From: Callorhinchus milii
Taxonomy: Eukaryota
Direction of reading: 5' to 3'
DNA length: 64,000 nt
Assembly (NCBI RefSeq): GCF_018977255.1
Contig: NW_024704746.1
Span: 68,138,001 to 68,202,000, forward strand
A program made the position numbers and the translations under genes. Shown piece by piece: positions 1-57,135 of this stretch (its first letter is position 1; each line of letters starts with the position of its first letter). Under the pieces are notes generated by a model. That model worked only from the letters and a program-made list of their open reading frames with translations. It did not search any database and was not told the origin of the DNA.

Positions 1-1026
1 CCCATCTCAGAATGGAATCTCTCTCCGGAAGGATGGACCCCATTTATAGAATTCCAGAGTGTATTAGCCACTGTGCTGCTGGAGACTAACCAGATTGTCA
101 TTGAAAGCACTGTTTGACAACTTTCTGGTTGCTTGCCCGGCTTTGGCTTGCAGGGTCAACAGGAGGAGAGGGAAAACTCCCTGTCCCCACCAAGTCCTAC
201 TGATGAGGATACTGGCTGGTCTGTCATCAACAGGACTTATAGAGTGGCTCAGAAACAGAACTGAGACCACACAGAGGATTGTCTTGATTCTGACATTCCC
301 TTCCCAGCCATATCAGCTCCAAGAAGATGCTGCTTCCCTTCTCTCTCTCTATTTCCTTCATGTATGTGTGTGAGGTTCGAGTGAAGAAGCTCCTTTGGTT
401 CACTTGATCTTGAGCTTTCCCCCATCACCCACTCCATCTAATGTCCTCCCATTACCGGATTTAGCTTTTTTTAATATAAAATATCCGAGATTCTGGCTTA
501 ATGACTTAACTATGTAGAAAGAATGAAAGTAGAAAGAGCTTACATTTTTATAGTGTCTTATCGCCTTAAGACATCTAATTTTACTGTAAACATTGTCACA
601 TATAGTGGCTGTTTTTGGCAGACAAACTCAGCAGCCATTTTGCTCATAGCAAAGTCCCACAAACAACCATGAAGTGAATCATTGATTCATCTGAAGTATT
701 CTTGGCTGAGAGAAACCTGGTGCTCTTTGAGAAAGCTGTGGGTTATCTACCAGGGGACAGCACTTTTGGCAATGGGAGCAATCTCCCAGAGTTGTAGTGT
801 AAGCCCAAGTCCCAACTTGGAGTCTGAACCCACTTCATGACAGATGGAGAGCCAGAGGGGGAGAAATGTGGAATCCTATAGCTCACTTGAGTGACAGATT
901 TATTATTTAATCCACGACTGTTTGCTGGACACTGTTGTGTGCAATTGGCTGCTGTTTTTCGCTCACAAAATATACAGTCACTACACTTTACAGTATATTC
1001 TGTAACTGTAACTTCGCTTCTCTTAC

Positions 1027-1080
1027 CATGGCAGTCTGATTAAGTTGTTCCAATATATTTTTGAGGTATTTTGCAGTCAG
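1027..1080 (-). CDS. Candidate next exon of legumain-like gene, copy b ([18 protein letters not shown])
   Basis: cttctttttcatacag|, |gtaaga; phase 0-0; homologous to 1854-1901. Confidence 0.5.
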
Positions 1081-1853
1081 CTGTATGAAAAAGAAGATCA
1101 ATATATCATGAGATTAAGAGAAGTTTTGCACACTGTTGAGGGAAATTCCAACTATGTCTACATTTGGCAAATTCTTAAACACAGCTTTAAGTTTGAAGCA
1201 GTTTTCTATAAATGTAATGTTACTATCTCCATAAAAACTGATTTCACAATTTGCTCATTTCTGGACCCTCTAAAATGCTACATAAATAAATCAAGACCCA
1301 GGTGAAATTTCTCCACAATTCTTCCACAATACATATCCCACCACTTTCCCATTATAAATCCAGATGTTTCTTAAATAAGTCCAGTGTCCGGACCCAAGCG
1401 CCTAACCATGTAGAACAAAAGAAAAAATAATTTGAATATTTATAGAGTGTTATCACAATTAAAACACCTTAAAGCGTTTTGTGTCAAATATAGCAGCCAT
1501 TTTGCTCACCACAAACAACCATGAGATATAACCGACTGATCTAGGGTATTATTGGCCAGGCCACTACAATGAATTTCAGAATTTTTTTTCATGGCATCTT
1601 TAGCAAGCACCTGAACAGGCAGAGTGGGCCTCAGTTTAATGTCTCTTCCAAATGAGACAACCCCCTATAACACCTTGCTCCCCCCATTACTGCACTGGAG
1701 GGGGAGATCTCGTCCTGAAATGGGTTTGAGCCTGTAACCTTCTGACCCAGAAGCACAAGTTACCATGCGGAGACTTGATTAATGGGAGAAGGGATGTTTA
1801 TGTGCGATACTAAAATTGTTAACAAAGAGAATGTGTAACTCGAGGTCTCTTAC

Positions 1854-1901
1854 TTTGGCAAGTTTATCCTTCAGTATTAAATTGGTGAGGTCTTCAGTCA
1901 A
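1854..1901 (-). CDS. Candidate next exon of legumain-like gene, copy a (LTEDLTNLILKDKLAK)
   Basis: Strong pyrimidine tract + cag|, |gtaaga donor; only phase 0 is open, matching the previous exon; weak likeness to LGMN exon 7. Confidence 0.55.
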
Positions 1902-2452
1902 CTGATTGAAAGACAAGACAATAGACAATCAGACACAAGATCACAGGCAAACTTTCGATCAAAATTTAAAAACAACACCTGATCTCATCTTTGCACAATA
2001 CCCAAGCTGCCATCATCGCATTACAGAATCAAATTATTTCTTAAATGTGTCCCGTCCCCAGCTCAACTATTTATTCTACAAAGAAAGGAGAAAGAACTTG
2101 TGTATTTATAGATCTGATCACTTGAAACCATCTCAAAGTGTTTTATTGTAATTATTGTCAAAAGTAGTTGTGTTTTGTAGGTAAATGTGGTGTCAATTAT
2201 GCACATCGCAAAGGCCCACAAATAGCCATGAGATGAATGAATGGTTAATTTGAAGGATTGTTGGCCAGGACGTTGGGAGACACTTTGTATTCCTCTGTGG
2301 TGGGATCTTTAACATCTACCAAATCTGATGATGATTCTTGTTACTAATTCCTGGAGCACTTCAGCATTTTGATAATCGTTTGCTATCATTACCTCTGAGT
2401 CTTTGTCTGAAAGGAGCCTAATGTCATGAGAAGTTTCAAAATTATTACTCAC

Positions 2453-2528
2453 GTTAGAGTCAGGAAAACTGAGTTGTCCCTCTGATCCATGGCCAGAAAA
2501 GTAGATGAAGATGTTATCTTGGGGTTTA
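2453..2528 (-). CDS. lgmn-like: Legumain-like catalytic-His exon (IYFSGHG)
   Basis: ccacag| acceptor, |gtgagt donor, 76 bp. Confidence 0.92.
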
Positions 2529-5371
2529 CTGTGGTAATAAGTATTTGCAATAAACTGTCACTGTATTTCTATCAGCTGATGCAATAATCATCACGTGCTC
2601 AGTGGTATTTCCATACCCCTACTTACAATAATAATAAGAATCTTTGCATTTGATACAGCGCCTTATCACGTCTTTGAGACGTCTCAAAGCGCTTCACAGG
2701 ATATACTGTAAAGTGTAATACTAGGATCCTATGAGCTGTCTTTACAACTTTGTCCAGTCAGTTGCCTTTTTGGCTTTGAAGACTTATGTAAGTTAACCCC
2801 TAGTGGGGAGAAATTCCCCCCAAGTCTGGATTTACCCTATTTATGTAGATTTCAGAGCATATAGAATTCACCAAGTTATTGGATCCAGACTTAACCTTGA
2901 AGACGGTTTTCTGTAGTTCATGTCTTTGGACATCTGACAAACACGGACTTGAACCTATATAATTGTATGTAAGTTATTTCTGGCCAACTACCTTCCAGAT
3001 GAATCGTTCTTCCATAATCGATTGCATTTTGTAAATCACTTCAAGACAGTTGTTACCATCACCGGTAAGAAACCGTCACTGATTTCAGAGCATTGGTATC
3101 ATTAGAAAGATTAACACGAGATGTTTGTACCTTTTAATCACCCGTCCACTTCCTATTCCGCGAACGGCAGCTTCATTGCCTGTCAGCACCGACAGGAAAT
3201 TCTTTGGAGTAACATCCTGTGTGTGTGTGTGTGTGGGGTGGGGTGGGGGGTAGAATATAAATTGGTTTAATAGAAATATATAATATGAATTATATAATAT
3301 AAAAGTGAGAAATAAGTAATCACTTTATAAAGTTATAATTTTAAAGTTTTTTTTGTTCTTGCATGTATAACGCACTTAAATATGAATTAATGGTGATTGA
3401 ATGACTTTACAATGCTCAGTAGTGCATCAGTGCTCCAACACTCTATCCTGGTTGAGGGTACTATATAAATAATAATACTAATTTACATTTACATCTCAAA
3501 GCACATCACAGGGACAATGGGATTCACTGGTTGTAGTGTATGAAAAGTTAGGAAAGTCTGAGGAACAAACCGTAGACAGAGATCAGTACAGATATACTTA
3601 CTTTTCCAGTGTAGTCTTTTTGGACGCCTTCATACACATTGAGTTCAGATTGGCTGCTGATGAGAACACCTGGAGTTGGGTTTCTGGTTGCCCAAGAGAA
3701 GTCAAGAAAGGAAATGACCAATATGAGCACACTTATCACTTCCAATTTTTTTTCCTCTCCATCGTTTCTAACTATTCCCCTGGGGAGCGGAGAGGTAGGT
3801 GTTGGGGCTAAACTGGCTTCAGGGTGACTTGCTTGGCATTGGAATGTGGAATCAAGTGAACTCTCTGCGGTGCTTTTGGTCTTCCAGCTCCTGAGATGGG
3901 CAGGTCCTGGACATGGCTGATAGGGCCAGCAAATCCAGCTCATTGGCAAGCCGTATAGAGACAGAGTCATCTCCATGGGACAGGGATTCTTCCTTTAAGC
4001 TTCTGTTAACCCTGCAAGCAAAGACCCTAATGGGTGGGAAGGTCCAAGCTGGACATGGAATGGACAGGTGGTTTTAATGGCAAACTAATGTTTTTTAGCT
4101 GGTGGAACTCCAGCAATTAACCCAATCTATACTCTGGGGTCTCCAAGCTGTGGCTCACTCCAACTTGTGTATAATCTTCTCCAGAATTAGATAAGCCGGG
4201 TGTGTCACTCCAGGAAGAAAGTGCCATGATAGTCACATGTTAACAAGAAAGCTTCAGATGAAGAGGATCCTTTAGCTTTCCAGAATCTCAACCCTACTTT
4301 CTTCTCATTGTAACATCAATAATAATAATAATTCTTGCATTTGATATAGCACTTTTCACGTCTTCTTGACGTCTCAAAGCTCTTCACAGAATATGCTGTA
4401 AAGTGAATTGACTATATATTTGTGGGCAAATCAACATGTTCCTTAAAGCATTCAGCAATCTGGCCTTTACCAACATTCCTTTCTAGCTTTTGTTTAGCTT
4501 CTGTATAAAGAAATAATAATAATAATGAGGTCACAAGATTGGTTTGGATGGAGAAGATTAATGACTGAATAGACTAATAAATATATATACTTTCATTGTT
4601 TACCTGTCATTGTGCGCAATGTCGTCGTACATCATCACCACTATCTGTTCAGCTGGAATCTTGTTCCTACGGACAATCTGATAGGCATGACATATGTTGG
4701 CCTGAAAATAAAAAATATTTAACATTTTAGACCTCCAGAAGATAGCAACGAGGGGATCTAAAGGAGAATTTAGGAGGAACTATTTCACACAGAGGGTAGT
4801 GAGATTATGGAACTCGCTGCCAGAAGTGGTGGTTGAATCAGACGGTGTAGATGCATTGAAGAGGAAAATAAACCTTCACATGAGGGAGAGGTGAATAGAA
4901 GGGTTTGGGAGGGAGGGAGTGAGGAATGGGTGAAGACTTGTGTGGAGTATAAACACCAGTACAGACTGGTTGGGCCTCGTGACCTGTTTCTGTGTTGTAC
5001 GTTCTGGGTGAATCTTCACATCTGATGTGAAAGACGGCATCTCCAACAATCCAGAGTTCCCCCAGTTCAACAACAACAACAACTTGGATTTATACAGTGC
5101 CCTCCACGCCGGACGGCGTCTCAGAGCACTTGTTCTGAATTGGAGTGTTATCTTTCACTGTGATCTACACTCCCAACATTTGGCTTCAACACACAACCTT
5201 CACAAAGGCGAAACCATGACAAGAGGAGGAGCCAAACTGATACGTCAGAAGACATTTCACTGATGTCTGAAGCCAATAATAATGGAATTGCTTCACTTAC
5301 CTGATCACAATAGTCGTCCCAGGTCTTTGAACCTGCCACAAGCAGGACCCACTGTTTGACGGGGGTTGTAT
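2453..5371 (-). CDS. lgmn-like: Legumain-like (peptidase C13) gene, divergent paralog; securely identified exons join(5371-5301,4701-4604,3683-3602,3216-3131,2528-2453)
   Basis: Five AG..GT exons splice in frame: (D)[137 protein letters not shown]. This is colinear with legumain. Exon sizes 98/82/86/76 bp match human LGMN exons 3-6 as I recall them. The 3' half of the gene is unresolved. Confidence 0.93.
3131..3216 (-). CDS. lgmn-like: Legumain-like exon ([15 protein letters not shown])
   Basis: cacag| acceptor, |gtacaa donor, 86 bp. Confidence 0.92.
3602..3683 (-). CDS. lgmn-like: Legumain-like exon (NPTPG..KDYTGK)
   Basis: accag| acceptor, |gtaagt donor, 82 bp; lies within track ORF 3548..3976. 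Confidence 0.92.
4604..4701 (-). CDS. lgmn-like: Legumain-like exon ([18 protein letters not shown])
   Basis: ttttcag| acceptor, |gtaaac donor, 98 bp. Confidence 0.93.
5301..5371 (-). CDS. lgmn-like: Legumain-like exon ([13 protein letters not shown])
   Basis: ttacag| acceptor, |gtaagt donor, 71 bp, phase 1-0. Confidence 0.9.
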
Positions 5372-5883: not shown

Positions 5884-6328
5884 GGAGTCCTGTAGCTCAG
5901 TGGTTAGAGCACTCGCCTCGCAAGCGAGAGGACCCGGGTTTGATTCCCGGCATCGCAAAACATTGGGCCAGTTTCCTTACTCCACACACCTCTGTTTACT
6001 TAGCAGTAAGTAGGAACCCGTTTTTTTAGTCAATTGGATCGCTTTTCCAAGCATAATAATAGCTTCAAAAAATAATCATAATAATTTGGTCATTTAATCA
6101 ATCAATAAATAAATAAAATCCTTCAAAACATGATTTAAACAATAATAATAATTTGGTCACTCAATCCACGACTGTTTGTGGGACGCTGCTGTGTGCGATT
6201 GGCTGCTGCATTTCGCTCACAAAATATACAGTGAATTCACTTTACAGTGTATCCTGTGAGACGTCTCGAAGACATGATAAGGCGCTGTATCAAATGCAAG
6301 GGTTATTATTATTATCATCATTATTATT
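5884..6328 (+). mobile_element. Full-length tRNA-head / L2-tail SINE, the dominant family (EshSINE/SINE2-CM-like)
   Basis: tRNA-like head with A/B boxes, conserved body, gagacgtctc..gataaggcgc..(att)n tail; dozens of partial copies across the window. Confidence 0.9.
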
Positions 6329-7293: not shown

Positions 7294-7411
7294 CCATCAG
7301 CTCACGTCTGCTGCTCAACACCCAGAAGCTCTAAAGGAAATAACGCCAAGACCAAGCAGTGCTAATCATAATTGAGCTAATCGTTGGGCGTGTTCTATCT
7401 CGGACTTTATA
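7294..7411 (-). promoter_or_regulatory. Candidate TATA box and first exon of the legumain-like gene
   Basis: TATAAA at 7411-7406 (minus). About 110 bp downstream is ATG G|gtaagg (7297-7294), phase-1 compatible with exon 5371. Confidence 0.45.
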
Positions 7412-9650: not shown

Positions 9651-10027
9651 GGAACCCTGTAGCTCAGTGGTTAGAGCACTCGCCTCGCAAGCGAGAGGAC
9701 CTGGGTTTGATTCTTGCATAAGGTGAAACGTTAGGTAAGTTTCCTTACTCCACACACCTCGGTTTACCTCGCAGTAAGTAGAAACCCGGTTGTAGGTCGA
9801 TTGGCAGATCACTTTCCAGGGGTAATAATCACCTGAATTTTTTTTAAAAAAGAATAATGTGGTCACTCAATCCACGACTGTTTGTGGAACACTGGTGTGT
9901 GCAATTGGCTGCCACATTTCGCCCACAAAATATAGTCAATTCACTTTACAGTATATCCTGTGAAGCGCTTTGAGACATCTTGAAGGAGTGATAAAGCGCT
10001 GCATCAAAATCAAGGGTTAGTATTATT
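9651..10027 (+). mobile_element. Same SINE, near full length
   Basis: Head-body-tail as at 5884. Confidence 0.88.
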
Positions 10028-10294
10028 CACAGTAAAGCCCAGGCGAGTGGATTGGTGGATGAAGCATCTGAGACGTGCTGACTGATAACTACTGTGATCC
10101 TACTTGCACATCTGTAAATCTTTTCTATAACTTACACTTTTCTTTAAACCTGAGACAACTGCAAGATGAACATAAAACATACAAAAAACACACCAAAGGC
10201 AGACGGAACACGCCTGGAAATGTACAGATGAAACAAAAACTGTCGAATGTCTGAGATGATGAACAGGAAAAGTGTCAATTGGGAATTTGCACAG

Positions 10295-10810
10295 AAGTCT
10301 GAGTCACACCAGTCACAAACAATTTGTACGCAGGTACAGCAAGCAACTAGGAAGGCTAATGGCATGTTGGCATTTAATGAAAAAGGGTTAGAGTACAAGA
10401 GTAGGGAGGTCTTGCTGCAGTTGTATGAGGCCTTGGTGAGACTGGACCTGGAATATTGTGTGCAGTTTTGGTCTCCTTATTTAAGAAAGGACATACTCGC
10501 CTTAGAGGGGGTGCAGCGTAGATTCACTAGGTTGGTTCCTGGGATGAGGGGGTTGACCTATGAGGATAGGTTGAGTAAACCAGGCCTATATTTTCTAGAA
10601 TATAGAAGAATTAGGGGTGATCGTAGAGAAACATATAAGATTCTTATGGGGCTTGACAGAGTAGACAGTACGAGACTATTTCCTCTGGTAGGAGAATCTA
10701 GAACTAGGGGTCACAGTCTTAAGATTAAGGGACAGCCTTTTCGAACAGAGTTGAGGAATTTATGGACTACCCGAATGGCCTACCTCTGCTCCTAATTCCT
10801 TTGTTCCTAT
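10295..10810 (+). mobile_element. CR1 LINE 3' fragment
   Basis: LVRLDLEYCVQFWSPYLRKDI..VQRRFTRL. Confidence 0.92.
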
Positions 10811-15000: not shown

Positions 15001-18000
15001 GTGTTGTTGGTGTTGGTGTTGTTGTTGTCTAACCTCCGATCCAGGGGTGGGCAAAATACGTCCCGCGGGCCATATCCGGTCCGCCAAATGATTCTATCCA
15101 GCCCGTCATTGTGTCCAGCAATAGAAAAAAATTATAGTTTGTTCAGTCCCGGAAAGGATCAGTTTTAAATGCGTCCCTTATGTTTCTTACGTTTGTCACA
15201 CAGCGTCGATGTTTAATTGCTAAAGCCGTTAGTTTTTTTTTGCATTTCAATCAGACCGGGAACGTCAGCCAATCACACGGCTTAGTTGTGCGCCGGCTCC
15301 CTTCAGCGTTGAATCGGGCTGACGTCAGAAATTTACTGATCGGCGAATTTTCAAACACGGTGTCGGCCACGGCACGAGCAGCGTAAAGCCTCACCGCCAT
15401 TAATAATTTTCACCGATGAGGACGTCACTGTGATTTATCCGTTTATTACGCGTTTGCATTTTTTGTGCACCGATTTGGTATCTGTATCTATATCGCCCAT
15501 AAACCGCGAATGTTAATTCGAAATGAGTTTATCAAAGAAAAGGAAAGCGGACGCTGGAGGCCGAATATTCAACAAAGAATGGACTTCCAAATATTTTTTT
15601 TTACCGGTGTGGGTGGAAAAGCTGCGGCCTTAATTTCCAAAGCAAGTGTGGCAGCGCTCAACTTGAATCGGCATTTGGAGAGCAAACACGCTTGCAAATA
15701 TAAGAACTTTTCTGCCGAAGAAGAAGGAAAAAAAGCTGGTGAGAGATGGTTGTTCGAATGCAAAAAGAGCAAAGCATTTTCACGGAACAATTCGAGTCCC
15801 TGGAAGAGATTACAAGAGTGAGTTACGTGATTGCACACAAAATCGCCAAGAACAGCAAACCATTCTCTGAAGGAGAATTTATAAAAGAATGCATTGACTC
15901 TGCCTCGATTTTATGCCCAGACAAGAAAAAATAGTTCGGGAACAATAGCTTGTCAAGGCGAACTACTGTGAGACGTGTCGAGGATATCTCTGAGAACCTG
16001 TATCTGCAGTTAAAAAATAAAGTAAACAATTTTGCATGTTTTTCACTGGCACTCGATGAGAGTTGTGATGTCAAAGACACAGCCCAGTTGATATTTTTTT
16101 ATTCAAGGTATCACCAAACATCTTGAGCTCACAGAAGAATTGGCATCAACGCAGTCAATGAAAGATACGACAACTGGAGAAGACTTTTTGGAGGCAGTAA
16201 ATAAGTGCGTCTTAAAATTAGGAGTGGATTGGAAAAGAATGGTGAATGTGACCACCGATGGAAGCCCAAATCTGACGGGCAAAAATGTTGGGTTACTGAA
16301 AAGAATTCAAGATCAAGTCAAAGAAACAAATCCAGAACAGAATATTGTTTTTCTACACTGCATTATCCACCAAGAGGTCCTCTGTGAGAGTGTTCTAAAA
16401 CTAAGCAATGTCGTGGACACAGTTACGGAAGTGGTCAACTCCATTCGAGCAAAAGGATTAAGCCACAGGCAATGCGTAACGCCGCTTGAGGAATTGGAAT
16501 CCGAGCACACGGATGTTCTGTGTCACACGAATGTAAGATGGCTCAGTTTAGGAAAGGTCTTGAAAAGAGTGTGAGAACTGAGAGCAGAGATTGATTTATT
16601 TTTGGACCTCAAACAAAAAGATTGGGATTTCCCACAGCTGAATGATGCCAATTGGCTCTGATTTCGCATTTGCCGTTAATATCATGGGCCATGTGAACGA
16701 ATTGAATTCAAAGCTGCAGCGGAAGGGCCTTTGTGCACGATTTGTATTGCGGCGTCAAGTCATTTATGACAAAATGACTTATTTTATCGCGTCAGATAGG
16801 AAACAGGCAGTTCGCCCACTTTCTAACTTTGCAGCAGATCAAAGCCTTAAAAAGTATACTTCGTCACTATTTGGCTTACGTGCCAAATTTTTTTGACGAT
16901 TCCAGGATTTCAATTTGATTGACAATGACCTGTCTTTAGTCTCTTCACCTTTCTCATTTGATGTTGACAAAGCCCCACTTGGCCTCCAATTTGAGCTTAT
17001 TGACCTGCAATGTGATCCATTGCTTGCGGAGCAATTCAAATCAGTGCCGCTTCCCAGTTTTTACGCTTCTCTTAATGAATATACCTTTCAAAAAATAAAG
17101 GCTCATGCCCAGAGGAGGCTTGAGCTGTTTGGATCAACATACATATGCGAGCAGACATTTTCTGTGATGAAATTCAATAAATCAAAACAGAGATCTGCGA
17201 TGACTGATGACCACCTTGCAGCAGTACTCCGCATTGCAACAACGGAGACAACGCCTGACTTCAGTTGTCTGGTTAACGCACATCAGCGCTTTCATTCTTC
17301 CCATTGAGTGAGCGTCTCACATTCTCATCAACATGTGAATAAATGAATAAATATCGAATAAATGTCTGCTCGATGAGTTGTTTTTATTTAACCTAATTTT
17401 AACGAATGTCAATTATATGGACTTTATTTTATGCACGTACAAGCGTAAGGCTTGATTTTGAGCTATTATTAAGCGTTTGCATCTATGTTAAGTGTGTGAC
17501 CCGTGAAGCTTACCAAAACTCATGAAGCCAAAATAATTTCCCACCCTGCTCCAATCGTTTGGCTGAGTGGAGTCCAGCCCCACCAGCAGCACAAAATGCC
17601 ACACTTGACATCTGCAATGGCAGCCACCAACAGCTTCCGGTCCTACCAATGTGTTGAGGTAAGTGGAGGAGGGGGTGGGAAGGGGATGGGTGGTAGCATC
17701 AAACCAGTTGCCAAACAGCCTGGACTCAGCTCAACCAACATTGCCCACAAATGTACAGTCAAATCACTTTACAGTCTATTCTGTGAAGCGCTTTGAGACG
17801 TCGAGAAGACGTGAAAAGCGCTATATCAAACGCGAGGATTATTATTTTTTATGATAACCAAACAATCAGAAGTGAGACAGTCGCTTTCAAGATGAATTGA
17901 AAAAATATTTGCAATTTTCACATATTTGCACGTTTCCCACCCAATGTCAGGTACCTACGTGCTGAGCCTTCGTGTGGTTTTGTATAGGTGTTCTCGCTGC

Positions 18001-21000
18001 GTACATGTGTATAAGTTCACCTAACCACAGGACGCCTGAAATGGCATGAGCTGGACAGCCTGAGCCACAGGAGGTGCAACCTTCGCGACAGAGAGCTTCA
18101 GGCTGCTCTCCGCTTGCTGCACCGATCAGCGGAAACTCTGAGGTGTGCACAAGTTAGACCAGTGTTGTCTCGGGTCCCACCGCACCCTCGCTGTTTCTTC
18201 CCATCTAACCTTCACACGTTAGCATTTCACAGAAATTAAAAGCTAAAAATATTTCATAAGCGAGAAGGCACAAATACAAGCTGGTCAGCAGCAGATCTAA
18301 CAGGGCGTTTAGGAGGAAATTACCCACAAAATTTACAGTCAATTCACTTTTTAGTATATCCTGTGAAGTGCTTTGAGACGTCTCGAAGACGTGATAAGGA
18401 GGTGTATCAAATGCAAGATTATTAACATTAATATTTGCATTTAATACAACGTCTTTCACATCCTTGCGCTGTCTCAAAGCACTTCACAGGATTTACTGCG
18501 ATGTACAGCGACTCCCAGCAAACAGCCATGAAGTGAATCTGGACTCACTCCATGAGTGAGGTGTAAACCATGATGATTTCTGATGGGCTTTTATTCCTGT
18601 TAGACTTGCAGGGTGGCCATTCTGGAGAGGACAGTATCAGAGTGGCGTTGTTGTGGCTCAATCGGCCCAAGTCCCTGTTCATGTGACTTGGTTTCCCTTT
18701 GATAGAAGTCAGGACCTTGCTCTAGCTCCTGCCTCCCTCCCACTATCTTCCTATTACAACATCATCCTCTCTTTACCACCACTACACTTCCAGTAGCCAA
18801 TTCAGATCGCCCTCTGTGGAAAGAATCCTGGTACTTTCTTCATTGTCCTGAAATTTCCCGTCACACCCTCAAACTGTGCCCTTTAGTCCTGCTGCTTTGC
18901 TATGTCTGTAAGCATTGCTCCAAGTTTACTTTCTCTCTGTGTTGAACATCTTACATTATTGGGTCTCGCCTCTGAGTCAGACAAGTTCGATTTGCACGTT
19001 GGGACTTTGAGCTCCCAGTCTAGGCTGATGCTCTGTAGGAGCGTTACATGGTCAGGGGTGACGTCCTTTCGGTGAGACGTTCAACTGAAAATGGTGACTC
19101 GATCCACGACTGTTTGTGGGACGCTGCTGTGCGCAATTAGCTGCTGCATCTCACCCACAATTCACAAAGTCAATTCACTTTACAGTGTATCCTGTGAAGC
19201 ACTTTGCGACGTCTCAAAGACGTGATAAGGCGCTGTATCAAATGCCAGGATTATTATTATTATAGTCGCACAGTAGGATTATTAACGTCCACTTGAACAG
19301 GGCACATGCGAGGAGTTTGGTTTAACATCTCATCTGAAGGACAGGCCTTGGGAGTGGTGTGAAGGAGATTAAACTAACAAAGCTGTTTAACTGGTTCACA
19401 AGTGGCAAAGGTTGGAGCTTGAGTAGGTGCATGAAAGAGGTGAGGTTAAAGAGGTTAAGGTGTAACGTACCCTTGTGTGTTGGAGGTATGAACGCGGTCT
19501 GGTTTATCTCCGACTGCAATGCTGGGTGCTGGACGGTGCACGTGATGTGGGCTCCATCAGAGCAGGTCTCTGTGGAGACGCAAGCAGTGGCTGTCATGTT
19601 GTAGGTTCTGTCGGAGTTTCTGGTCGGAGTGGAGAGGGTCCACTTGGTGAGGCGATGGGCAAGGCAGGTGCTGTGAAATCTCATCTCGATAGATTCCGGG
19701 TAGAAGCCGCTTGCCAAACACATGACCAGGACCCGGGAAGAAGAGTTTTCCACAGGGACCGATGGGAATATCCGAAGGGCAGGACAAGCTGGTTACAAAA
19801 AGTAATGGGAGAGCAATTACAAGGGAGTGAATCCAAGTGCATGGGATAGAGTATGTCACAGAGAGTGTGGCTCTAGTGGACAGGACACTGGGTCAATAAG
19901 TACAACAACAACAACTTGCATTTACATAGCGCCCCTCACGCAGGGCAGCTTGACATGGGTGGAGCACAACACCAAGAGGGGGAAGGTGACTTTAGGCACG
20001 GTCAAAGAGGAAGGACCTGAAGATGAAGAAGGAAGGGGGCAAGGATAAGAGGGAGCGTGTTCCAGAGTTTCAACGCTGAAAGTGCGGCCACTGATGGTAG
20101 AATGGAGTCACCCCATGTAGGAGCCGGAGCCAGTCGAGTGGAGGCAGCGGGGAGTGGAGTGGGGGGAACGGAGGTTTGGGAGGTAGGGAGGGTCAGGGCA
20201 TGAAGGGATTGAAAAGGAATTTGAGGATCTTGAAATCAATCTATTGGGCAATAGATCTCAGTACAGTAAGTAAAGTATTTCTGAAAAAGAAATTGTGTGC
20301 CAGGGCTGGATGAGGCGTCTGGAGTCTAACCAACTAAAATCACAAAACTTGCCTTTGAGACCATCCTCTCCGTTAGGGCTTTGGCTGTGGGGTTACCGGG
20401 GGTGAGGGGGAGGATTCCCTGCCCCCAGTGACTGGTCGGCCCTTCCAGGTCCTGCCGATGAGCCGGGCTGCGCTGCCATCAGCACAGGGACACTGTGGCC
20501 CCTTCTGGCTCAGGAACCGGGGACTAGAGACCGTCACAGAAGGGTGGATCAATTTCGACTTTCTGTTGCCAAACATTTTACCTTAGAGCCAGTTCAGCTC
20601 CGAGGAGACCTCGCTTACCTCCTCCTAAGGAGAATAGGAGGATCAACAAATCAAATTCATCAAACGTGCAAAATAATTACCGGTCACATTCAGCCTCGTC
20701 CCTGTTCCCATGTTTGTGTTTGTCGGAGGAGGTAGGGCTATAGCCAACTCACAGCGATACACTCCACTGTCATTGACTTGTACATCTTTGATTTGCAGAG
20801 TAAACGTTTTATTCGTGACATTGTGCATGACAGCATAGCGAGAGTGATTCAACAAACTGGTTGGTAATGTCACGGTGGAGTTCATGGTATCAGCCTGGAA
20901 ATACCACCGTATTGTAAACCTTTCTAAACGAGCTGCTTCATGCCGACAACTCAATGTCACGCAGTCTCCCTTCGATGCAGTAAGAGCTGATAACTGGTGC

Positions 21001-22207
21001 AAAACCATGTGAGCTGGGTGACACGCTGGAGGGAAGAAATTCAGAAAGGAATTATCACAACAGGTCCATTAGTAATCATACTCCTGAGTTTAAGCTCCCA
21101 CACACACAGCCTTACAAGCCAACAATTCAAAACAAACAGGTACAAATTCACTTGCCTAATTCACTGTAAATGTTGAATCGATCCCCAGGAAACAATAACA
21201 AGCGATATTTACACAGCGCCTTTCACGTTGGGAGACGTCCCAAGGCGCTGGGGGTTGGGATCAGAAGGGTGGAGGCAGGGAGGGTAAGGGTAGGAGGGTG
21301 ACCGAAAGCATGGTCGAAGAAGCGGGTTTTTGAGATGGTAAACCAGGCTGCAGTAGACCATCCCTTGCCTTGAAGGAGGCAAGAAAGGAGGTGAGGCAAA
21401 GGAACCTGAGCTCAAACATACACCCTGTAAATTCAACTCCAGCCCGTCAGATGTTGATGCAAAAAGTGTGTTGTGAGCTGTGAAAATGATCTCGGACCGC
21501 AGGTCACCCCATTTCACATCCTGCATTGAATAGAATCATAAACACTTACATGACCCATTTGGCTCTTCATGTCTGTGTCGGCTCTTTTAAACAGCGATCC
21601 TTTCAGTGATCATTTCAGTCCCATTTACCTGCCTTCCCTACCCCCAAACCCCACGACATCTAACAAAACAGAATACACTGTAAAGTGAATTGACTGTATA
21701 TTTGGTGGGCGAAACCTGGCAGCCAGTTGCGCACACCAGCGTCCCACAAACAGTCATAAATTCAGTGTCCAAATTATTACAGTATTATTAGTTTTTTTTT
21801 GAAGGGATGATAATGCCCGAAAAGTGATCCACCAATCAACTAACAACCGGGTTCCTACTTAGTGCTACGTAAACCGAGGCCGGTGGAGTAAGGAAACTTG
21901 CCTAACAGTTTACTCTGCCCAGTAATCGAACGCAGGTCCTCTCGCCTGTGAGGCGAATGCTCTGACCACTGAGCTACAGGACTCCACAATCACCTCCAGT
22001 CACTGATCCATTGTCACCTTTAACTTTATGTATTCCAATGCGCTTTTCCATCTCAGTGTTTCACAGCCATGTTCCACAACAACAACAGCTTGCACTTATA
22101 TAGCACCCTAACACACGGATTAGCATCTCGGAGTGCTTCACGTTGTTCCTCAGAAGCCCCATACCTGTGAACAACAGCATCAAGGAGAGGTAGGTTAATG
22201 TAGCCAT
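11929..22207 (-). CDS. Inhibitory Ig-superfamily receptor, leader-V(J-joined)-C1-TM-2xITIM, 318 aa; join(22207-22165,21025-20681,19788-19471,14105-14004,12911-12856,12021-11929)
   Basis: All six exons have AG/GT ends and compatible phases (1,1,1,1,0); 957 bp with no internal stop. Signal MATLTYLSLMLLFTA; V ..VTLSC..IRWY..DSGVYRC..LPPP..MGTGTRLNVT; C1 CLASGFYP..ITCTVQHPAL; TM YLWIYISISVSILVGCGVTGFAALVV-KRR; tail ICYAQL and MVYSQV. Confidence 0.9.
12856..12911 (-). CDS. Ig receptor cytoplasmic exon 1
   Basis: tttgcag|..|gtgagt, 56 bp, phase 1-0, SQRQAVGSTRRPPLGEDDQ. Confidence 0.8.
13467..13778 (-). mobile_element. Internally deleted SINE subfamily copy
   Basis: Near reverse complement of 58582-58913. 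Confidence 0.85.
14004..14105 (-). CDS. Ig receptor transmembrane exon
   Basis: gatttacag|..|gtaagt, 102 bp, hydrophobic span followed by KRR stop-transfer. Confidence 0.88.
15042..17548 (+). mobile_element. Full-length decayed hAT (Charlie/Buster/SPIN, GTF2IRD2-like) DNA transposon
   Basis: TIRs caggggtgggcaaaa and taatttcccaccctg; 8-bp TSD ctccgatc/ctccaatc; transposase motifs FSLALDE, TTDGSP, HCIIHQ, RWLS, FGSTYICEQTFS split by stops and frameshifts. Confidence 0.93.
19471..19788 (-). CDS. Ig receptor C1-set exon
   Basis: 318 bp, phase 1-1, C-x-A-x-G-F-Y-P and C-x-V-x-H motifs. Confidence 0.93.
20681..21025 (-). CDS. Ig receptor V-set (VJ-type) exon
   Basis: 345 bp, phase 1-1, canonical Cys/Trp/Cys and GxGT G-strand. 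Confidence 0.95.
21670..21985 (-). mobile_element. Same SINE
   Basis: Reverse-complement head and body. Confidence 0.85.
22165..22207 (-). CDS. Ig receptor leader exon
   Basis: ATG..MATLTYLSLMLLFT G|gtatgg, phase 1. Confidence 0.8.
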
Positions 22208-23963: not shown

Positions 23964-24315
23964 CAAAAATAATCCTCGCATTTGATGCAGGGCCTTATCA
24001 CGTCTGTGAGACGACTCAAAGCGCTTCACAGGATATACTGTAAAGTGAATTGACTGTATATTTTGTGGGCAAAAAACAGCAGCCAATTGCACATAGAAGT
24101 GTCCCACAAACAGTCGTGGATTGTGTAAGCAACTTGTTTTTTGAAGGGATTATTACTCCCAGAAAGTGATCCATCAATTGACTAACAACCGGGTTCCTAC
24201 TCACTGTGGGGTGTGGGGTAAGGAAACTTGCCCAATGTTTTGCTCTGCCCGGGAATCAAACCCGGGTCCTCTCGCTCCCAACGTGAGTGCTCTAACCACC
24301 GAGCTACAGAACTCC
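23964..24315 (-). mobile_element. Same SINE
   Basis: Reverse-complement full copy. Confidence 0.87.
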
Positions 24316-24339: not shown

Positions 24340-24900
24340 AACTTTCTCTATAACTTTCTGTGTATGTATATTTATATACAGACACACTGTAACTCTGTGT
24401 ATATACACTATATCTCTGTGTGTTTATATACATTGTATCTCTGTATATATGTGTACACTGTATCTCTGTGTATATACACTGTATATCTGTGTATATATAC
24501 ACTGTATCTCTGTGTATATACACTGTATATCTATGTATATATACACTGTATCTGTGTGTATACACTGTGGATATATATCTGTGTGTAAACACTGAGTTCA
24601 TATATATACAGTCTCTCTGTGTGTAAACACTGTGTATAAATACACTGTGTCTCCGTGTGTAAACACAGTATCTCTGTGTGTAAACACAGTATCTCTGTGT
24701 GTAAACACAGTATCTCTGTGTGTAAACACAGTATCTCTGTGTGTATACATAATGTATATACTGTATATACTGTATCACTATGTGTAAACACTGTGTATAT
24801 ATAGATCCACTGTACCTCTGTGTGTAAACATTGCGTATATATACTGTATCTCTGTATGTATACATTGTATCAGTGTGTGTATACACTGTATCTGTGTGTG
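24340..24900. repeat. Degenerate AT/AC-rich minisatellite (about 19-21 bp, e.g. gtgtgtaaacacagtatctct)
   Basis: Visible tandem units. Confidence 0.9.
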
Positions 24901-24901
24901 A

Positions 24902-25535
24902 AAAGGGGTTGGGGAGGGGGAGGGGTTGGGGGAGGGGGAGGGGTTAGGGGAGGGGTTGGGGAGGGGTTGGGGAGGGGGAGGGGTTGGGGGAGGGGGAGGG
25001 GTTAGGGGAGGGGAGGGGTTAGGGGAGGGGTTGGGGGGGGGGGGGGGAGGGGTTGGGGAGGGGAGGGTTAGGGGAGGGGGAGGGGTTGGGGGAGGGGGAG
25101 GGGTTGGGGGAGGGGGAGGGGTTGGGGGAGGGGGAGGGGTTGGGGGGGGGAGGGGTTGGGGGAGGGGGAGGGGTTGGGGGAGGGGAGGGTTGGGGGAGGG
25201 GGAGGGGTTGGGGGAGGGGAGGGGTTGGGGGAGGGGGAGGGTTGGGGGAGGGGGAGGGGTTGGGGGAGGGGGAGGGGTTGGGGGAGGGGGAGGGGTTGGG
25301 GAGGGGGAGGGTTAGGGAGGGGGAGGGGTTGGGGGAGGGGGAGGGGTTGGGGGAGGGGGAGGGTTAGGGGAGGGGGAGGGGTTGGGGGAGGGGGAGGGGT
25401 TGGGGAGGGGAGGGGTTGGGAGGGGAGGGGTTGGGGGAGGGGGGGGGGGGGGGGGTTGGGGAGGGGGGGGAGGGGTTGGGGGAGGGGGAGGGGTTGGGGA
25501 GGGGAGGGGTTAGGGGAGGGGGAGGGGTTGGGGGT
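24902..25535. repeat. G-rich 18-bp tandem array (ggggttgggggaggggga)n, G-quadruplex forming
   Basis: About 630 bp of G4-5 tracts separated by 1-2 nt. Confidence 0.95.
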
Positions 25536-25549
25536 TATGGTGCGATGTT

Positions 25550-25600
25550 ATTGGCTGAGACTCTAAGCCCCGCCTCTGGGCCGCGCATGCGCGCGCGCGT
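25550..25600. promoter_or_regulatory. CpG-type promoter: CCAAT (25550-25554), GC box (25568-25574), NRF1 palindrome GCGCATGCGC (25583-25592)
   Basis: Three classic promoter motifs within 45 bp in a local CpG cluster; target gene not determined. Confidence 0.6.
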
Positions 25601-25654
25601 TCTGTTCTGAGTTAATGCGCTGCGCGAGGATCGCAAACCATTTTACTGATTAAC

Positions 25655-26470
25655 TACAGCGACAGTCACTACACCAACAGCGACAGTCACTACACCAACA
25701 GCGACAGTCACTACAGTACGTGCTACAGTCACTACAACTACAGTTACTACAGCGACAGTCACGTCAGCGACAGCGACAGTCACTACAGTAAGTGCTACAG
25801 TCACTACAGCAACAGCCACAGTAACTATCGGCAGTACAGTAACTATCTACAGTAACAGCTGCAGTAACTATCTACAGTAACTATCTAACAGTAACTATCT
25901 ACAGTAACTATCGGCAGTAACTATGTGCAGTAACTATGTGCAGTAACTATCGGCAGTAACTATCTACAGTAACAGCTGCAGTAACTATCTGCAGTAACTA
26001 TCTGCAGTAACTATCGGCAGTAACTATCGGCAGTAACTATCGGCAGTAACTATCGGCAGTAACTATCTGCAGTAACTATTTGCAGTAATTATTTGCAGTA
26101 ACTATCGGCAGTAACTATCGGCAGTAACTATCGGCAGTAACTATCGGCAGTAACTATCTACAGTAACAGCTGCAGTAACTATCGGCAGTAACTATCGGCA
26201 GTAACTATCTACAGTAACTATCTACAGTAACAGCCACAGTAACTATCTACAGTAACAGCCACAGTAACTATCTACAGTAACAGCTGCAGTAACTATCAGC
26301 AGTAACTATCTGCAGTAACTATCTGCAGTAACTATCTACAGTAACTACCTGCAGTAACAGCCACAGTAACTATCTACAGTAACTACCTGCAGTAACTATC
26401 TACAGTAACAGCCACAGTAACTATCTACAGTAACTACCTGCAGTAACTATCGGCAGTAACAGCTGCAGCG
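25655..26470. repeat. 12/13-bp minisatellite (cagtaactatctg / cagtaactatcgg / cagtaacagctg variants)
   Basis: Visible tandem units with variant interspersion. Confidence 0.95.
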
Positions 26471-29889: not shown

Positions 29890-31490
29890 ATGTCTCAATT
29901 TCCATAAGTTGCACTCATTTCCAAACAGAACATTAAAGCTTTGATTTGTGGGAATTAGAGGAGTGAAGCGCGAGTGGGAGAAATTGATCCGAACCCACTC
30001 ACGATGGGGTCTGTGGTTCATTTAATGCATACCCACCGACACTACGTTCTTCTCCCAGGTAGTTTGCAAACTTGTGGCCGTCACTCAGAGGACAATGAAG
30101 GGCTTTGGGATTTCAAAACTGGTCAGGCTAATAAACGCGTCCCAAAGTAAGAGCAGACTGGTGTTTTCCTTTGAGAGGCAACTCTCTTTAGGTATTGTAT
30201 ATGCATAGTTACTTTCTTTTTCACTGTTGTGTTTAGTCTAACATATTGGATTGCTGAATTTAGTCTAACATGCTGGTGTGAAACTGTTTCCTGGTCTTCA
30301 TTTGGACTAATAATCCTTTCATTCGATGTAGCGCCTTCTCACGTCAAAAGCAACTCACCGTTTCGCTGTGTGTGTCGTGATTCTGAAGTGTGGTGACTGT
30401 ATTGTAGGCAAATGTGGCAGCTGGTCCTACAAACAGTCATGAAATGTTTTTTCCTTCTCTCTTCTCTCTAATCACTCTTCTCTCTCTCTCTTCCAAATGA
30501 CTGATTTGTGAATGTCTACATTGGAAAACAATTCTAAGTGAATTATAGCAGAATGTATTAGTAACTCATTAACATAGTTATTTACCATTATTTTACTCTA
30601 ACCAGAGGAATTAAGTTTTAAGAGAGAACCATCCAACTGTCATATGCAGACACACTGTCAAAATATAGCACAGTGTGGTGAGCTGATGGTGAGCTTGTGC
30701 TGGGTTCGGGTTGGATTAAACGAATAGTGCTGTGGGATATTTAACATCCATCTGAACAGACACACACCAGAGTTAATGAGATAACAATACATTAAGCTTA
30801 ACCACTCATTCGTTTTGTTTACTGTTTTCCATTACTCTCCAAGAAATTGTACTCCAAGGTGTTGGAATGAACCATTGCCTCCCAGCTTCGCTCTTCCTTT
30901 CCAAACATGAAGCCCTCCAATCCAGAGTCTCTCCAGCTCTCTCGAACTCCTCCTGGAGTCCCTCTGACTCCACTTTGAGAGATGCCTTTACGTGGTTCGA
31001 GGCCTGTTTTAAGACCTAACTCTTTGACTGCGCCTTCAGCCATCATCCCCCCTCCCTTCCCATCCCCAAAGGGTTAGGTCTTAAAACAGGCCTCAAGTGT
31101 CAAGCCAGCAGCGTGCAGAGCTTTGAGAGATCTTCCGATGTTAAAGACACTATGTATTATAAATTGTATACTGGCGCACACAATTAAGTTTGCCACATAA
31201 ACTTATCTTATTTAAAACTTATCTGCCTTTTCCTGCAGTCCTCCTCCCTGCAGCACATCATTGGTAGGGGAGCTTTCAGCCACTTTTCCCCATTCTCTGA
31301 AACCCCTTTAAGTCCCTCTGCCTCATTTCCTCCCTTTCTGGTGTGTCAAAACCATCTATAACCCTCCGCTCATCCTAACTGCTTCAATCTTGCGCGCTGA
31401 TGGGGCTCCATTACTGTAAAGCACTTTGAGATGCTCCACGTGAAAGGTGCTCTGTAACTGCAACTTGTTGTTGTTGTTGTTGTAGGTATT

Positions 31491-31695
31491 ATGAGCAGAA
31501 GGCGCCTTTACAGCGTGGCACCTATAATCAAAGTGGAGCCAACCAGAGGACTGATGGATGAACTAATGAAGATGGAAGTTTCGCATTTAGTCCCCAATCA
31601 GCCCGTCACATTGCACTCGAGGCTGGAGTCTGATGATTCTTTCTTTTGGGAAGCATACGCTCACTACGTCAGCGATGCGGAGGGCACTGTCAAAG
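31491..31695 (+). CDS. ACOT-like: ACOT exon 1
   Basis: MSRRRLYSVAP..EGTVK G|gtttgt. Confidence 0.9.
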
Positions 31696-56925: not shown

Positions 56926-57135
56926 GAGCGCGTTTCATGTCAGGAGGACATCCCAAGGTGCTGAAAGTGCTCGATACTGCCTACCCCGACACCCCAACCA
57001 TCCACAATTCTACCAACCCCACAATTCTCCCCCACCCACAGACCCACACACCTATACCCCATTCCCCCCTCCACTTACCCCAAAACACACAGACACTGCA
57101 GAGGATTCACGTTGTTCGTTCCAGGTTTTGCTATT

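What the first reader, a model, noticed from the sequence alone, without database searches (positions are those of the whole stretch)
2453..5371. Legumain paralog with a rewired active site: N42D, R44C, H45D, D147G
Seen: W-D-D-Y-C-D-Q in place of W-Y-N-Y-R-H-Q, and F-S-G-H-G in place of F-T-D-H-G, in otherwise well-conserved exons; the catalytic His is retained. Known: in human legumain N42 assists catalysis, R44/H45 line the Asn/Asp-specific S1 pocket, and D147 forms the succinimide linked to ligase activity. Inference: S1 has become acidic, implying a switch toward Arg/Lys specificity (as in other clan CD enzymes with SGHG-like motifs) or a pseudo-enzyme. Four targeted changes without stops suggest selection rather than decay.
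Basis: partly seen in the sequence, partly recalled or inferred. Interest (0 to 1): 0.75.

Follow-up and report, generated by a model that had tools for sequence, protein, structure and literature searches.

The report
Divergent second legumain gene, elephant shark
The window holds the first five coding exons of a second, highly diverged legumain-type protease gene of the elephant shark. Its asparagine-binding pocket has been dismantled, so it is probably a dead or retired copy and not a re-aimed enzyme.

Summary
Five minus-strand exons (5371-2453) with canonical splice sites encode legumain residues ~25-157: human legumain E=7.6e-54, Pfam C13 E=1.4e-51. WDDYCDQ replaces WYNYRHQ and FSGHG replaces FTDHG; His148 is kept.

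The window is Callorhinchus milii: a 186-aa Ensembl fragment is 99% identical. The locus is a paralog, at most 66% identical to any full-length legumain, and it lacks the RIN3/CPSF2 neighbours of canonical LGMN.

"Four targeted changes" is too narrow. Y41D and T146S also occur, and ten universally invariant columns are changed.

The same positions vary repeatedly in a large, uncharacterised family of "legumain-like" genes in ray-finned fish that lack a signal peptide. Some clades keep variant pockets with the His/Cys dyad intact; others have lost the dyad. The shark gene shares signature residues with that family, but orthology is unresolved.

The Cys189 half of the gene is not in the window. 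Exon 1 has no start codon, unlike seven comparator loci, and no further exon follows within 2.4 kb.

Best reading: a paralog that no longer works as an asparaginyl endopeptidase or ligase, most likely a pseudoenzyme or relic. A re-targeted protease remains possible.

The parts
5301..5371 (-). Exon a (71 nt). The first 2 nt complete a codon. Encodes (x)[23 protein letters not shown], human residues ~25-46, and carries N38K, Y41D, N42D, R44C and H45D. An in-frame TAA lies just upstream and the exon has no ATG.
   Evidence: the comparison with seven loci whose Met lies in this exon is
4604..4701 (-). Exon b (98 nt). Encodes [32 protein letters not shown](R), residues 47-79, and carries D48N and D63A.
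3602..3683 (-). Exon c (82 nt). Encodes [27 protein letters not shown], residues 80-106. The conserved INRPNG loop is replaced by ISSQSE.
3131..3216 (-). Exon d (86 nt). Encodes [28 protein letters not shown], residues 107-134. It keeps the canonical GIGSG(K/R)V motif and not the GPKK of the fish legumain-like genes.
2453..2528 (-). Exon e (76 nt). Encodes (S)[25 protein letters not shown], residues 135-159. It carries G136K, T146S and D147G and keeps the catalytic His148-Gly149.
7294..7297 (-). Speculative micro-exon end, ATGG|GTAAGG. It is the only ATGG+GT on this strand between 5372 and 16000. It would supply the 'M' and the first base of 'D' in the Ensembl model MDTTPVKQW.
   Evidence: About 2.6 such sites are expected by chance in 10.6 kb, so this is weak evidence.
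1668..1778 (-). Non-homologous 3' 'exon' of the Ensembl 186-aa model (SLRMVTCASGSEGYRLKP...*). It is reached through a GC-AG intron after intron read-through, and an AATAAA/ATTAAA signal lies at 1640. It is not a legumain exon.
1..2452 (-). Sequence downstream of exon e, with no legumain-like coding segment. The part of the gene that would carry Cys189, Glu190, Ser215 and Asp231 is either beyond the window edge or missing.
   Evidence: In comparator loci the next exon follows after about 100-500 bp.

Best explanation
This is the 5' half (residues ~25-157) of a second, strongly diverged legumain-family (peptidase C13) gene of the elephant shark, Callorhinchus milii. It lies at a locus different from canonical LGMN.

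Shown:
- Exon structure and splice sites are intact and the intron positions are the ancestral ones.
- The catalytic His is kept.
- The residues that make legumain an Asn/Asp-specific endopeptidase and ligase are replaced: R44C and H45D in the S1 pocket, N42D next to His148, and D147G at the succinimide site.
- Six further universally invariant residues are also replaced.

Inferred:
- The product cannot bind a P1 Asn as legumain does.
- It cannot run the succinimide-dependent ligation.
- The exon homologous to the start-codon exon has no ATG, no Cys189-bearing exon follows within 2.4 kb, and the only database protein model for the locus is a 186-aa fragment with a non-homologous tail. From these I judge that the gene is now a non-catalytic paralog: a pseudoenzyme, or a transcribed, truncated relic.
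- It evolved under purifying selection for most of its history. I do not think it is a working protease with a new specificity.

Its origin is unresolved. It is either the cartilaginous-fish counterpart of the signal-peptide-less 'legumain-like' family of ray-finned fish, or an independent old duplicate that converged on the same signature residues.
For: - Homology and motifs.
- Exon and splice anatomy.
- Species identity and the only existing model (P0121, 186 aa, 99% identical, UniRef/Ensembl only).
- No near-identical full-length protein among 5.8 billion proteins; the best is 66%.
- Invariant-column changes N42D, R44C, H45D, D48N, D63A, N88S, P90Q, G92E, G136K, D147G.
- No legumain exon beyond residue ~163 anywhere in the 64 kb, using either a canonical or a legumain-like HMM.
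- Met lies in the same exon as ..YRHQ in 2 canonical and 5 legumain-like loci, and the next exon follows 100-500 bp after exon 5.
- In the window there is an in-frame TAA and no ATG.
- The 3' end of the Ensembl model uses a GC-AG intron into non-homologous sequence with a polyA signal 25 nt after its stop.
- Published mutants: D147G/S fold, have reduced protease activity and no ligase activity (PMC4506564). N42D keeps about 50% activity at pH 5.5 and about 20% at pH 4.0 (PMC9604545). R44/H45/S216/D231 form the S1 pocket (PMC4357240).
- Cyprinid short legumain-like proteins, which share G147 and S88 with this gene and likewise have a changed 88-92 loop, have lost His148 and Cys189.
Against: - Five exons covering 137 codons stay open, with ten intact splice dinucleotides, despite about 40% amino-acid divergence. 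My rough estimate (reasoning, not computed) is about 0.2% for this under neutrality, even if only the changes at invariant columns arose neutrally.
- The number of departures at canonical-conserved columns (14 of 80) lies inside the range of full-length legumain-like genes conserved across species (10-22). The sequence itself therefore shows no excess decay.
- Several legumain-like clades keep variant S1 residues together with an intact His/Cys dyad: catfish D42-D44-V45, characiform G44-L45-A231, and serrasalmid SGHG. A rewired pocket can therefore belong to a maintained, possibly active protein.
- A usable AG acceptor and one upstream ATGG|GTAAGG site exist.
- The long fifth intron may simply hold repeats, with the remaining exons beyond the window edge.
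- The absence of an NCBI protein model is negative evidence only. I could not verify that C. milii RefSeq proteins are in the database.
Confidence: 0.5

Rival explanations
1. It is a working, neo-functionalised cysteine protease. The rest of the gene, with Cys189, lies beyond the window. The protein is cytosolic, with no signal peptide, and works near neutral pH, where Asp42 is deprotonated. Its S1 pocket, now Cys44/Asp45, selects a different P1 residue, possibly Lys or Arg.
For: - Open frames and intact splice sites.
- His148-Gly149 are kept.
- N42D legumain stays active and is more active at higher pH. Lys-specific gingipain K has Asp at the equivalent position (PMC9604545).
- D147G legumain still cleaves (PMC4506564).
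- Legumain-like genes of ray-finned fish lack signal peptides. They replace the Glu190 'activity brake' with His/Tyr/Phe. They include clade-conserved acidic or neutral S1 variants with the dyad intact: catfish D-D-V across Silurus, Pangasianodon and Ictalurus, and serrasalmid SGHG with Cys189.
- The divergence load is no higher than in those genes.
Against: - No Cys189 exon is visible, so activity is entirely untested here.
- Exon 1 has no start codon, unlike all seven comparator loci.
- Cys at position 44 and the changes D63A, N88S/P90Q/G92E and G136K are unique to this sequence among more than 220 relatives. That pattern fits drift better than a designed pocket.
- I recall His45 as part of the oxyanion hole (Dall and Brandstetter 2013). 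I could not check this, because the paper is not held.
- No transcript-derived protein for this gene turned up among Logan assemblies.
Confidence: 0.27
2. It is the cartilaginous-fish orthologue of the ray-finned-fish 'legumain-like' family. That would make the family an ancient jawed-vertebrate paralog of LGMN, lost in tetrapods and most teleosts. This concerns origin and is compatible with either functional reading.
For: - In the full-length tree the window sequence is sister to 22 legumain-like sequences with 99/98 support, apart from the canonical vertebrate clade.
- It shares the family's signature residues K38, N48 and S146, and frequently D41/D42.
- Exon 1 holds no signal-peptide sequence, and the Ensembl N-terminus MDTTPVKQW has the same length as gar MGENSSKQW.
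- The family reaches back to gar and sturgeon.
Against: - The AU test does not reject placing it with canonical legumains (p=0.25).
- When the 8 signature columns and three long-branch legumain-like rows (two short cyprinid forms and the anchovy sequence) are removed and only the covered region is used, it falls outside a 100/99-supported legumain-like clade. Its position is then unresolved (AU 0.23 and 0.48).
- It keeps the canonical GIGSG(K/R)V where the family has GPKK.
- No synteny could be shown.
- No canonical chondrichthyan legumain was available for the tree.
Confidence: 0.45
3. It is an assembly artefact, a haplotype copy, or a misread of the canonical LGMN gene.
For: None found. The idea arises only because just part of the gene is visible.
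Against: - It is only 57-66% identical to any legumain.
- An independent older assembly (the Ensembl protein) gives the same sequence, with one difference in 137 residues.
- The neighbours differ from those of a canonical locus.
- The window contains no N runs.
Confidence: 0.01

Closest known systems
Human/vertebrate legumain (asparaginyl endopeptidase, LGMN; MEROPS C13, clan CD)
   Same: Best sequence match (E=7.6e-54). Same Pfam family. Identical intron positions in the covered region. Catalytic His148-Gly149 retained, and the structural motifs CHAYQ, MMYDDIA, NPTPG, DYTG and GIGSG kept.
   Different: N42D, R44C, H45D and D147G, plus Y41D, T146S, D48N, D63A, the 88-92 loop and G136K. No signal-peptide sequence and no Met in the first exon. 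The Cys189 half and the prodomain are not seen. The chromosomal neighbourhood differs.
'Legumain-like' genes of ray-finned fish: automatic NCBI name; found in catfishes, cypriniforms, characiforms, gymnotiforms, Chanos, Engraulis, Megalops, Albula, gar and sturgeon
   Same: Shares K38, N48, S146 and D41/D42. No signal peptide. Recurrent replacement of R44, H45 and D147; the exact SGHG motif occurs in serrasalmid members that keep Cys189. Similar load of changes at canonical-conserved columns.
   Different: Their Met sits in exon 1 and they are full length, with Cys189 in most. They have GPKK where the shark gene keeps GIGSGR. Clade membership of the shark gene is not robust. I found no paper describing this family.
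Short (~260 aa) cyprinid legumain-like proteins, e.g. Megalobrama and Ctenopharyngodon
   Same: Gly at 147, Ser at 88, and a changed 88-92 loop (the residues at 90 and 92 differ from the shark's). They are truncated relative to legumain.
   Different: They have lost His148 (Leu/Val) and Cys189 (Ser/Asp), whereas the shark gene keeps His148. In the tree they sit inside the ray-finned legumain-like clade.
PIGK/GPI8, the GPI-anchor transamidase (the other C13 subfamily)
   Same: From memory, unverified here: Gly in the position of Asp147 (a TGHG motif).
   Different: A far weaker match (E about 1e-22, against 1e-54 for legumain). Also from memory, PIGK keeps N-Y-R-H.
Gingipain K (clan CD, family C25), Lys-specific
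   Same: Asp at the structural equivalent of legumain Asn42. It works near neutral pH (PMC9604545).
   Different: It belongs to a different family with no detectable sequence relationship here. This is an analogy for how Asp42 could function, not homology.

Membership tests
Peptidase C13 (legumain family) | Significant match to the Peptidase_C13 profile and to solved legumain structures | tested here: met
   PF01650 E=1.4e-51, profile positions 1-128 of 258. Human legumain 5lua E=7.6e-54.
Peptidase C13 (legumain family) | Catalytic His148 in the x-H-G motif | tested here: met
   FSGHG aligns with FT(D/N)HG.
Peptidase C13 (legumain family) | Catalytic Cys189 (A-C-E-S-G-S motif) | tested here: inconclusive
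   No exon covering residues beyond ~163 anywhere in the window, with tblastn or with two HMMs. The gene either runs off the window start or is truncated.
Legumain proper (asparaginyl endopeptidase) | Asn42 as the third catalytic residue | tested here: not met
   Asp at this position. It is Asn in 108 of 108 aligned full-length legumains.
Legumain proper (asparaginyl endopeptidase) | Arg44 and His45 of the Asn/Asp-specific S1 pocket | tested here: not met
   Cys and Asp. Both positions are invariant in the 108 legumains. Their role is described in PMC4357240.
Legumain proper (asparaginyl endopeptidase) | Asp147 (succinimide, needed for ligase activity) | tested here: not met
   Gly. D147G abolishes ligation in human legumain (PMC4506564).
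Legumain proper (asparaginyl endopeptidase) | N-terminal signal peptide and C-terminal LSAM prodomain | tested here: inconclusive
   No Met and no hydrophobic leader in the exon that carries them in Chanos and Polypterus LGMN. The prodomain region is not in the window.
Legumain proper (asparaginyl endopeptidase) | Ancestral exon-intron positions | tested here: met
   Boundaries after Q46, within codon ~79, after residue 106, within codon ~135 and after ~159 match the Polypterus, Chanos and gar loci.
Ray-finned-fish 'legumain-like' paralog family | Signature residues K38, N48 and S146 | tested here: met
   GSK, QAN and FSG in the window. Family frequencies are 79/113, 65/113 and 79/113.
Ray-finned-fish 'legumain-like' paralog family | Falls inside or sister to the clade in a tree | tested here: inconclusive
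   Sister with 99/98 support in the full tree. The AU test does not reject the alternative (p=0.25). The grouping disappears when the 8 signature columns are dropped.
Ray-finned-fish 'legumain-like' paralog family | Short N-terminus without signal peptide, with Met in exon 1 | tested here: inconclusive
   No leader sequence, but also no Met in the exon. The Ensembl model supplies M from a putative upstream micro-exon.
Ray-finned-fish 'legumain-like' paralog family | GPKK-type motif at residues 127-131 and a non-Glu residue at 190 | tested here: not met
   The window keeps the canonical GIGSGR. Residue 190 is not in the window.
PIGK/GPI8 transamidase | Best match to PIGK rather than to legumain | tested here: not met
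   PIGK chains score E=1e-22 to 3e-20, against 1e-54 for legumains.

The most novel reading that the evidence does not exclude
The shark gene is the sole cartilaginous-fish survivor of an ancient jawed-vertebrate lineage of cytosolic legumain-like cysteine proteases. These have no signal peptide, lack the Glu190 brake and often carry Asp42. Their S1 pockets have been repeatedly re-specified, including acidic pockets that would accept Lys or Arg. On this reading the shark protein is full length, with its remaining exons beyond the window, and is an active non-Asn protease.
Probability: 0.15. Interest if true: 0.7.

Novelty: new variant of a known kind. Interest (0 to 1): 0.4.

Why it matters
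Legumain is usually described as having a strictly conserved Asn-specific pocket. [quoted passage not shown]

This locus, and more so the fish 'legumain-like' family it led to, shows that vertebrate C13 proteins exist with Asp42, non-basic residues at 44/45 and Gly/Ser147. Some of them keep the catalytic dyad. All lack a signal peptide.

If any of them are active, they would be natural experiments in re-aiming a clan-CD protease. They would also be candidates for neutral-pH proteases with new P1 specificity.

The shark copy on its own is a weak example. Only its N-terminal half is visible, and its gene structure suggests it may be retired.

Tried and rejected
- Remaining exons. Nothing was found beyond residue ~163. 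The 'MVTCASGSEG' tail of the Ensembl model (window 1778-1668) looked like a decayed ACESGS exon, but neither HMM hits it and its alignment to P0151 is noise.
- Flanking DNA. An exact look-up of P0121 to obtain flanking genomic DNA found no record.
- P0141/L001. I hoped this was a chondrichthyan canonical legumain. It is a legumain-like transcript with a retained intron from an unidentified sequencing run.
- 50%-identity representative search. It gave no close relative, but it revealed the variant-pocket proteins that led to the legumain-like family.
- Synteny. No shared neighbours were detected between the window's ACOT/BAAT, Ig and TSP1/LDLa genes and four legumain-like loci with 10 kb flanks.
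- Phylogeny. It could not settle the gene's origin, and no canonical shark or chimaera legumain could be retrieved with the three capped searches.
- Literature. Searches for a description of the legumain-like family found nothing relevant. PMC3703970 (Dall and Brandstetter 2013) is not held.
- dN/dS. I did not compute it: the nearest coding sequences diverged more than 400 My ago, so dS is saturated, and no sister-species sequence was available.
- Structure prediction. I skipped it because half a caspase-like fold without the Cys189 half would not give a meaningful S1 model.
Full report
**What is in the sequence**

The window is vertebrate DNA without N runs. Five open segments on the minus strand between 5371 and 2453 translate to a legumain N-terminal half.

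The exact exons are 5371-5301, 4701-4604, 3683-3602, 3216-3131 and 2528-2453. Each is bounded by AG and GT, and the phases are consistent (read).

The concatenated 136-137 residues match human legumain structures at E=7.6e-54 and GPI8/PIGK only at about 1e-22. They match Pfam Peptidase_C13 at E=1.4e-51 over profile positions 1-128 of 258.

In the alignment WDDYCDQ lies on WYNYRHQ and FSGHG on FT(D/N)HG. The changes are therefore Y41D, N42D, R44C, H45D, T146S and D147G, with His148-Gly149 retained.

**Whose gene it is**

An unpadded protein search returned a 186-aa UniRef/Ensembl entry 'Legumain, Callorhinchus milii' (A0A4W3JBG1, P0121) at 99% identity. The window is therefore elephant shark.

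I repeated the search with the query padded to full length, so that full-length legumains qualified as candidates. Nothing closer than 66% identity was found among 1,811 hits. This is not the canonical LGMN:
- A 2026 preprint reports a canonical His-Cys legumain elsewhere in the C. milii genome (10.64898/2026.06.04.730232).
- The canonical Polypterus locus is flanked by a gene with RIN and CPSF-type domains, as I recall for human LGMN.
- The window instead holds an ACOT/BAAT-type gene (31-40 kb), Ig V-set and C1-set exons (19-21 kb) and a TSP1/LDLa ORF.

**How unusual the substitutions are**

I aligned 108 full-length legumains, vertebrate and invertebrate. N42, R44, H45 and D147 are invariant in all of them.

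The window sequence also departs at other invariant columns: D48N, D63A, N88S, P90Q, G92E and G136K. Of the 80 columns that are at least 95% conserved, 66 are kept and 14 changed. 'Four targeted changes in otherwise well-conserved exons' is therefore too narrow.

- R44, H45, S216 and D231 form the zwitterionic S1 pocket (PMC4357240).
- N42D legumain keeps about 50% activity at pH 5.5 and about 20% at pH 4.0. Lys-specific gingipain K has Asp at the equivalent position (PMC9604545).
- D147G and D147S legumain fold and cleave at a reduced rate but have no ligase activity. [quoted passage not shown]

**An unexpected context: the fish 'legumain-like' family**

The exhaustive search of 50%-identity representatives turned up proteins with variant pocket motifs: DYNDQ, DYRDQ, DYGHQ and NYQHQ. 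Cluster look-up names them 'legumain-like' from catfishes, cyprinids and anchovy.

A profile search then showed a large family. It includes many tandem copies in catfishes, plus cypriniforms, characiforms, gymnotiforms, Chanos, Engraulis, Megalops, Albula, gar and sturgeon.

A residue table for 113 members shows:
- No signal peptide. The N-termini are short, such as MGENSSKQW, and many follow an MGxxxS pattern.
- K38 in 79, N48 in 65 and S146 in 79 members. All three are shared by the shark gene.
- Glu190 replaced by His, Tyr or Phe in most.
- Asp42 in 30 members. Arg44 replaced by G/S/D/Q/K/N/A in about 30. His45 replaced by V/L/D in about 20. Asp147 replaced by Gly in 14 and by Ser in 6.

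Some variants are conserved across genera with the His148/Cys189 dyad intact:
- catfish D42-D44-V45;
- characiform G44-L45 with A231;
- serrasalmid SGHG.

The short cyprinid forms carry G147 and have lost both His148 and Cys189. I found no paper describing this family.

**Is the shark gene a member of that family?**

In a 42-taxon tree on full-length alignments it is sister to the legumain-like clade with 99/98 support, apart from a 100/98 canonical vertebrate clade. That result is not robust:
- The AU test does not reject joining it to the canonical clade (p=0.25).
- I restricted the data to the covered columns, dropped the eight signature columns (38, 41, 42, 44, 45, 48, 146, 147) and removed three long-branch legumain-like rows (two short cyprinid forms and the anchovy sequence). 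The shark gene then falls outside a 100/99 legumain-like clade. Its position is unresolved (AU 0.23 and 0.48).
- It keeps the canonical GIGSG(K/R)V where the family has GPKK.
- I could not retrieve a canonical chondrichthyan legumain for the tree, and 10-kb flanks gave no synteny.

The origin therefore remains open: an ancient shared paralog, or an independent old duplicate that converged.

**Is it alive?**

For a maintained gene:
- 137 codons are open and ten splice dinucleotides are intact, despite about 40% divergence.
- My back-of-envelope estimate, which is reasoning and not a computation, runs as follows. Even the roughly 17% change at invariant columns, if neutral, implies about 35 substitutions and several indels in 411 nt. 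That leaves roughly 0.2% probability of no stop, no frameshift and no splice-site hit.
- The load of departures at canonical-conserved columns (14 of 80) lies inside the range of full-length legumain-like genes (10-22).

Against:
- In two canonical and five legumain-like loci the start codon lies in the same exon as ...YRHQ. In the window an in-frame TAA lies nine codons upstream of the Trp, with no ATG between them.
- The Ensembl model's 'MD' start needs a micro-exon. The only ATGG|GT on that strand within 10.6 kb is at 7297, and about 2.6 such sites are expected by chance.
- In the comparators the next exon follows exon 5 after about 100-500 bp. Here nothing legumain-like occurs in the remaining 2,452 bp or anywhere else in the 64 kb.
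- The Ensembl model ends by intron read-through. It then crosses a GC-AG intron into a non-homologous segment (1778-1668) that is followed by a polyadenylation signal at 1640.
- No NCBI or transcript-derived protein carries these exons in the 75-598 aa range.
- Cys44, Ala63, the ISSQSE loop and Lys136 are unique among more than 220 relatives.

**Verdict**

The gene evolved under selection for most of its history but has lost what defines an asparaginyl endopeptidase and ligase. I put about 0.5 on its now being non-catalytic, either a pseudoenzyme or a truncated, retired copy. I put about 0.27 on its being an active protease with a new P1 preference, with the rest of the gene beyond the window.

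It cannot be assessed here without the Cys189 half of the gene.

The more interesting by-product is the uncharacterised family of legumain-like proteins that lack a signal peptide and have diversified S1 pockets.

Noticed in passing
window 51586-53991 (+), with a preceding ORF at 50131-50838 (+): An uninterrupted 802-codon ORF encodes a cysteine-rich protein with a thrombospondin type-1 repeat and an LDL-receptor class A module (Pfam). It also has EGF-like cysteine patterns and repeated C-terminal modules. The 236-aa ORF upstream may be an earlier exon. From memory it resembles proteins annotated 'SE-cephalotoxin-like' in fish; I did not test this.
   Followed up: partly
window ~31458-39657 (+): Exons of an acyl-CoA thioesterase / BAAT-family gene: a Bile_Hydr_Trans N-terminal region at 31458-31733 and a BAAT_C domain at 39364-39657.
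   Followed up: partly
window 19325-21068 (-): An immunoglobulin-superfamily gene with a V-set exon (20646-21068) and a C1-set exon (19325-19792). The V+C1 architecture is typical of antigen-receptor or MHC-related molecules. Its identity was not pursued.
   Followed up: partly
window 15420-17304 (+); 10232-10792 (+); 44157-45176 (+); 56230-56939 (-): There are long ORFs without Pfam hits at 15.4-17.3 kb, which by eye look like a transposase. Several reverse-transcriptase-like ORF fragments from LINE elements are also present. They were seen in the ORF list; only the first set was scanned.
   Followed up: partly
window 9654-9725, 21911-21982, 24241-24312, 32660-32731, 58585-58655, and similar sequence near 5885-5960: ARAGORN calls five tRNA-like sequences: three Ala, one Val and one Pro. 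They sit in repeated elements with a common downstream consensus (…gcatttgatacagcgcc…gacgtctcaaagcgcttcacag), which also occurs inside the legumain introns (about 2630-2720 and 4320-4400). They are most likely tRNA-derived SINEs and not tRNA genes.
   Followed up: partly
window 24384-26468: A 2-kb block of tandem repeats: a 21/42-bp unit, then about 630 bp of G-rich 6/18-bp repeats (GGGGAG), then a 13-bp unit repeated 49 times. It produces the strong GC-skew spike at 24-26 kb.
   Followed up: partly
proteins P0299-P0404 (related loci, not the window): Many ray-finned-fish legumain-like proteins start with MGxxxS(K), for example MGENSSK, MGGASSK and MGSTQSK. This fits the N-myristoylation consensus and suggests membrane-associated cytosolic proteins. 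In gar, the gene lies directly downstream of another gene with a legumain prodomain.
   Followed up: no
L001 (Logan contig SRR26104582_31417): A transcript of a legumain-like gene, with no signal peptide and with the motifs ESCFSGS and SDHG. It retains the intron at the DYTG|DVT boundary, the same intron position as between window exons c and d.
   Followed up: partly
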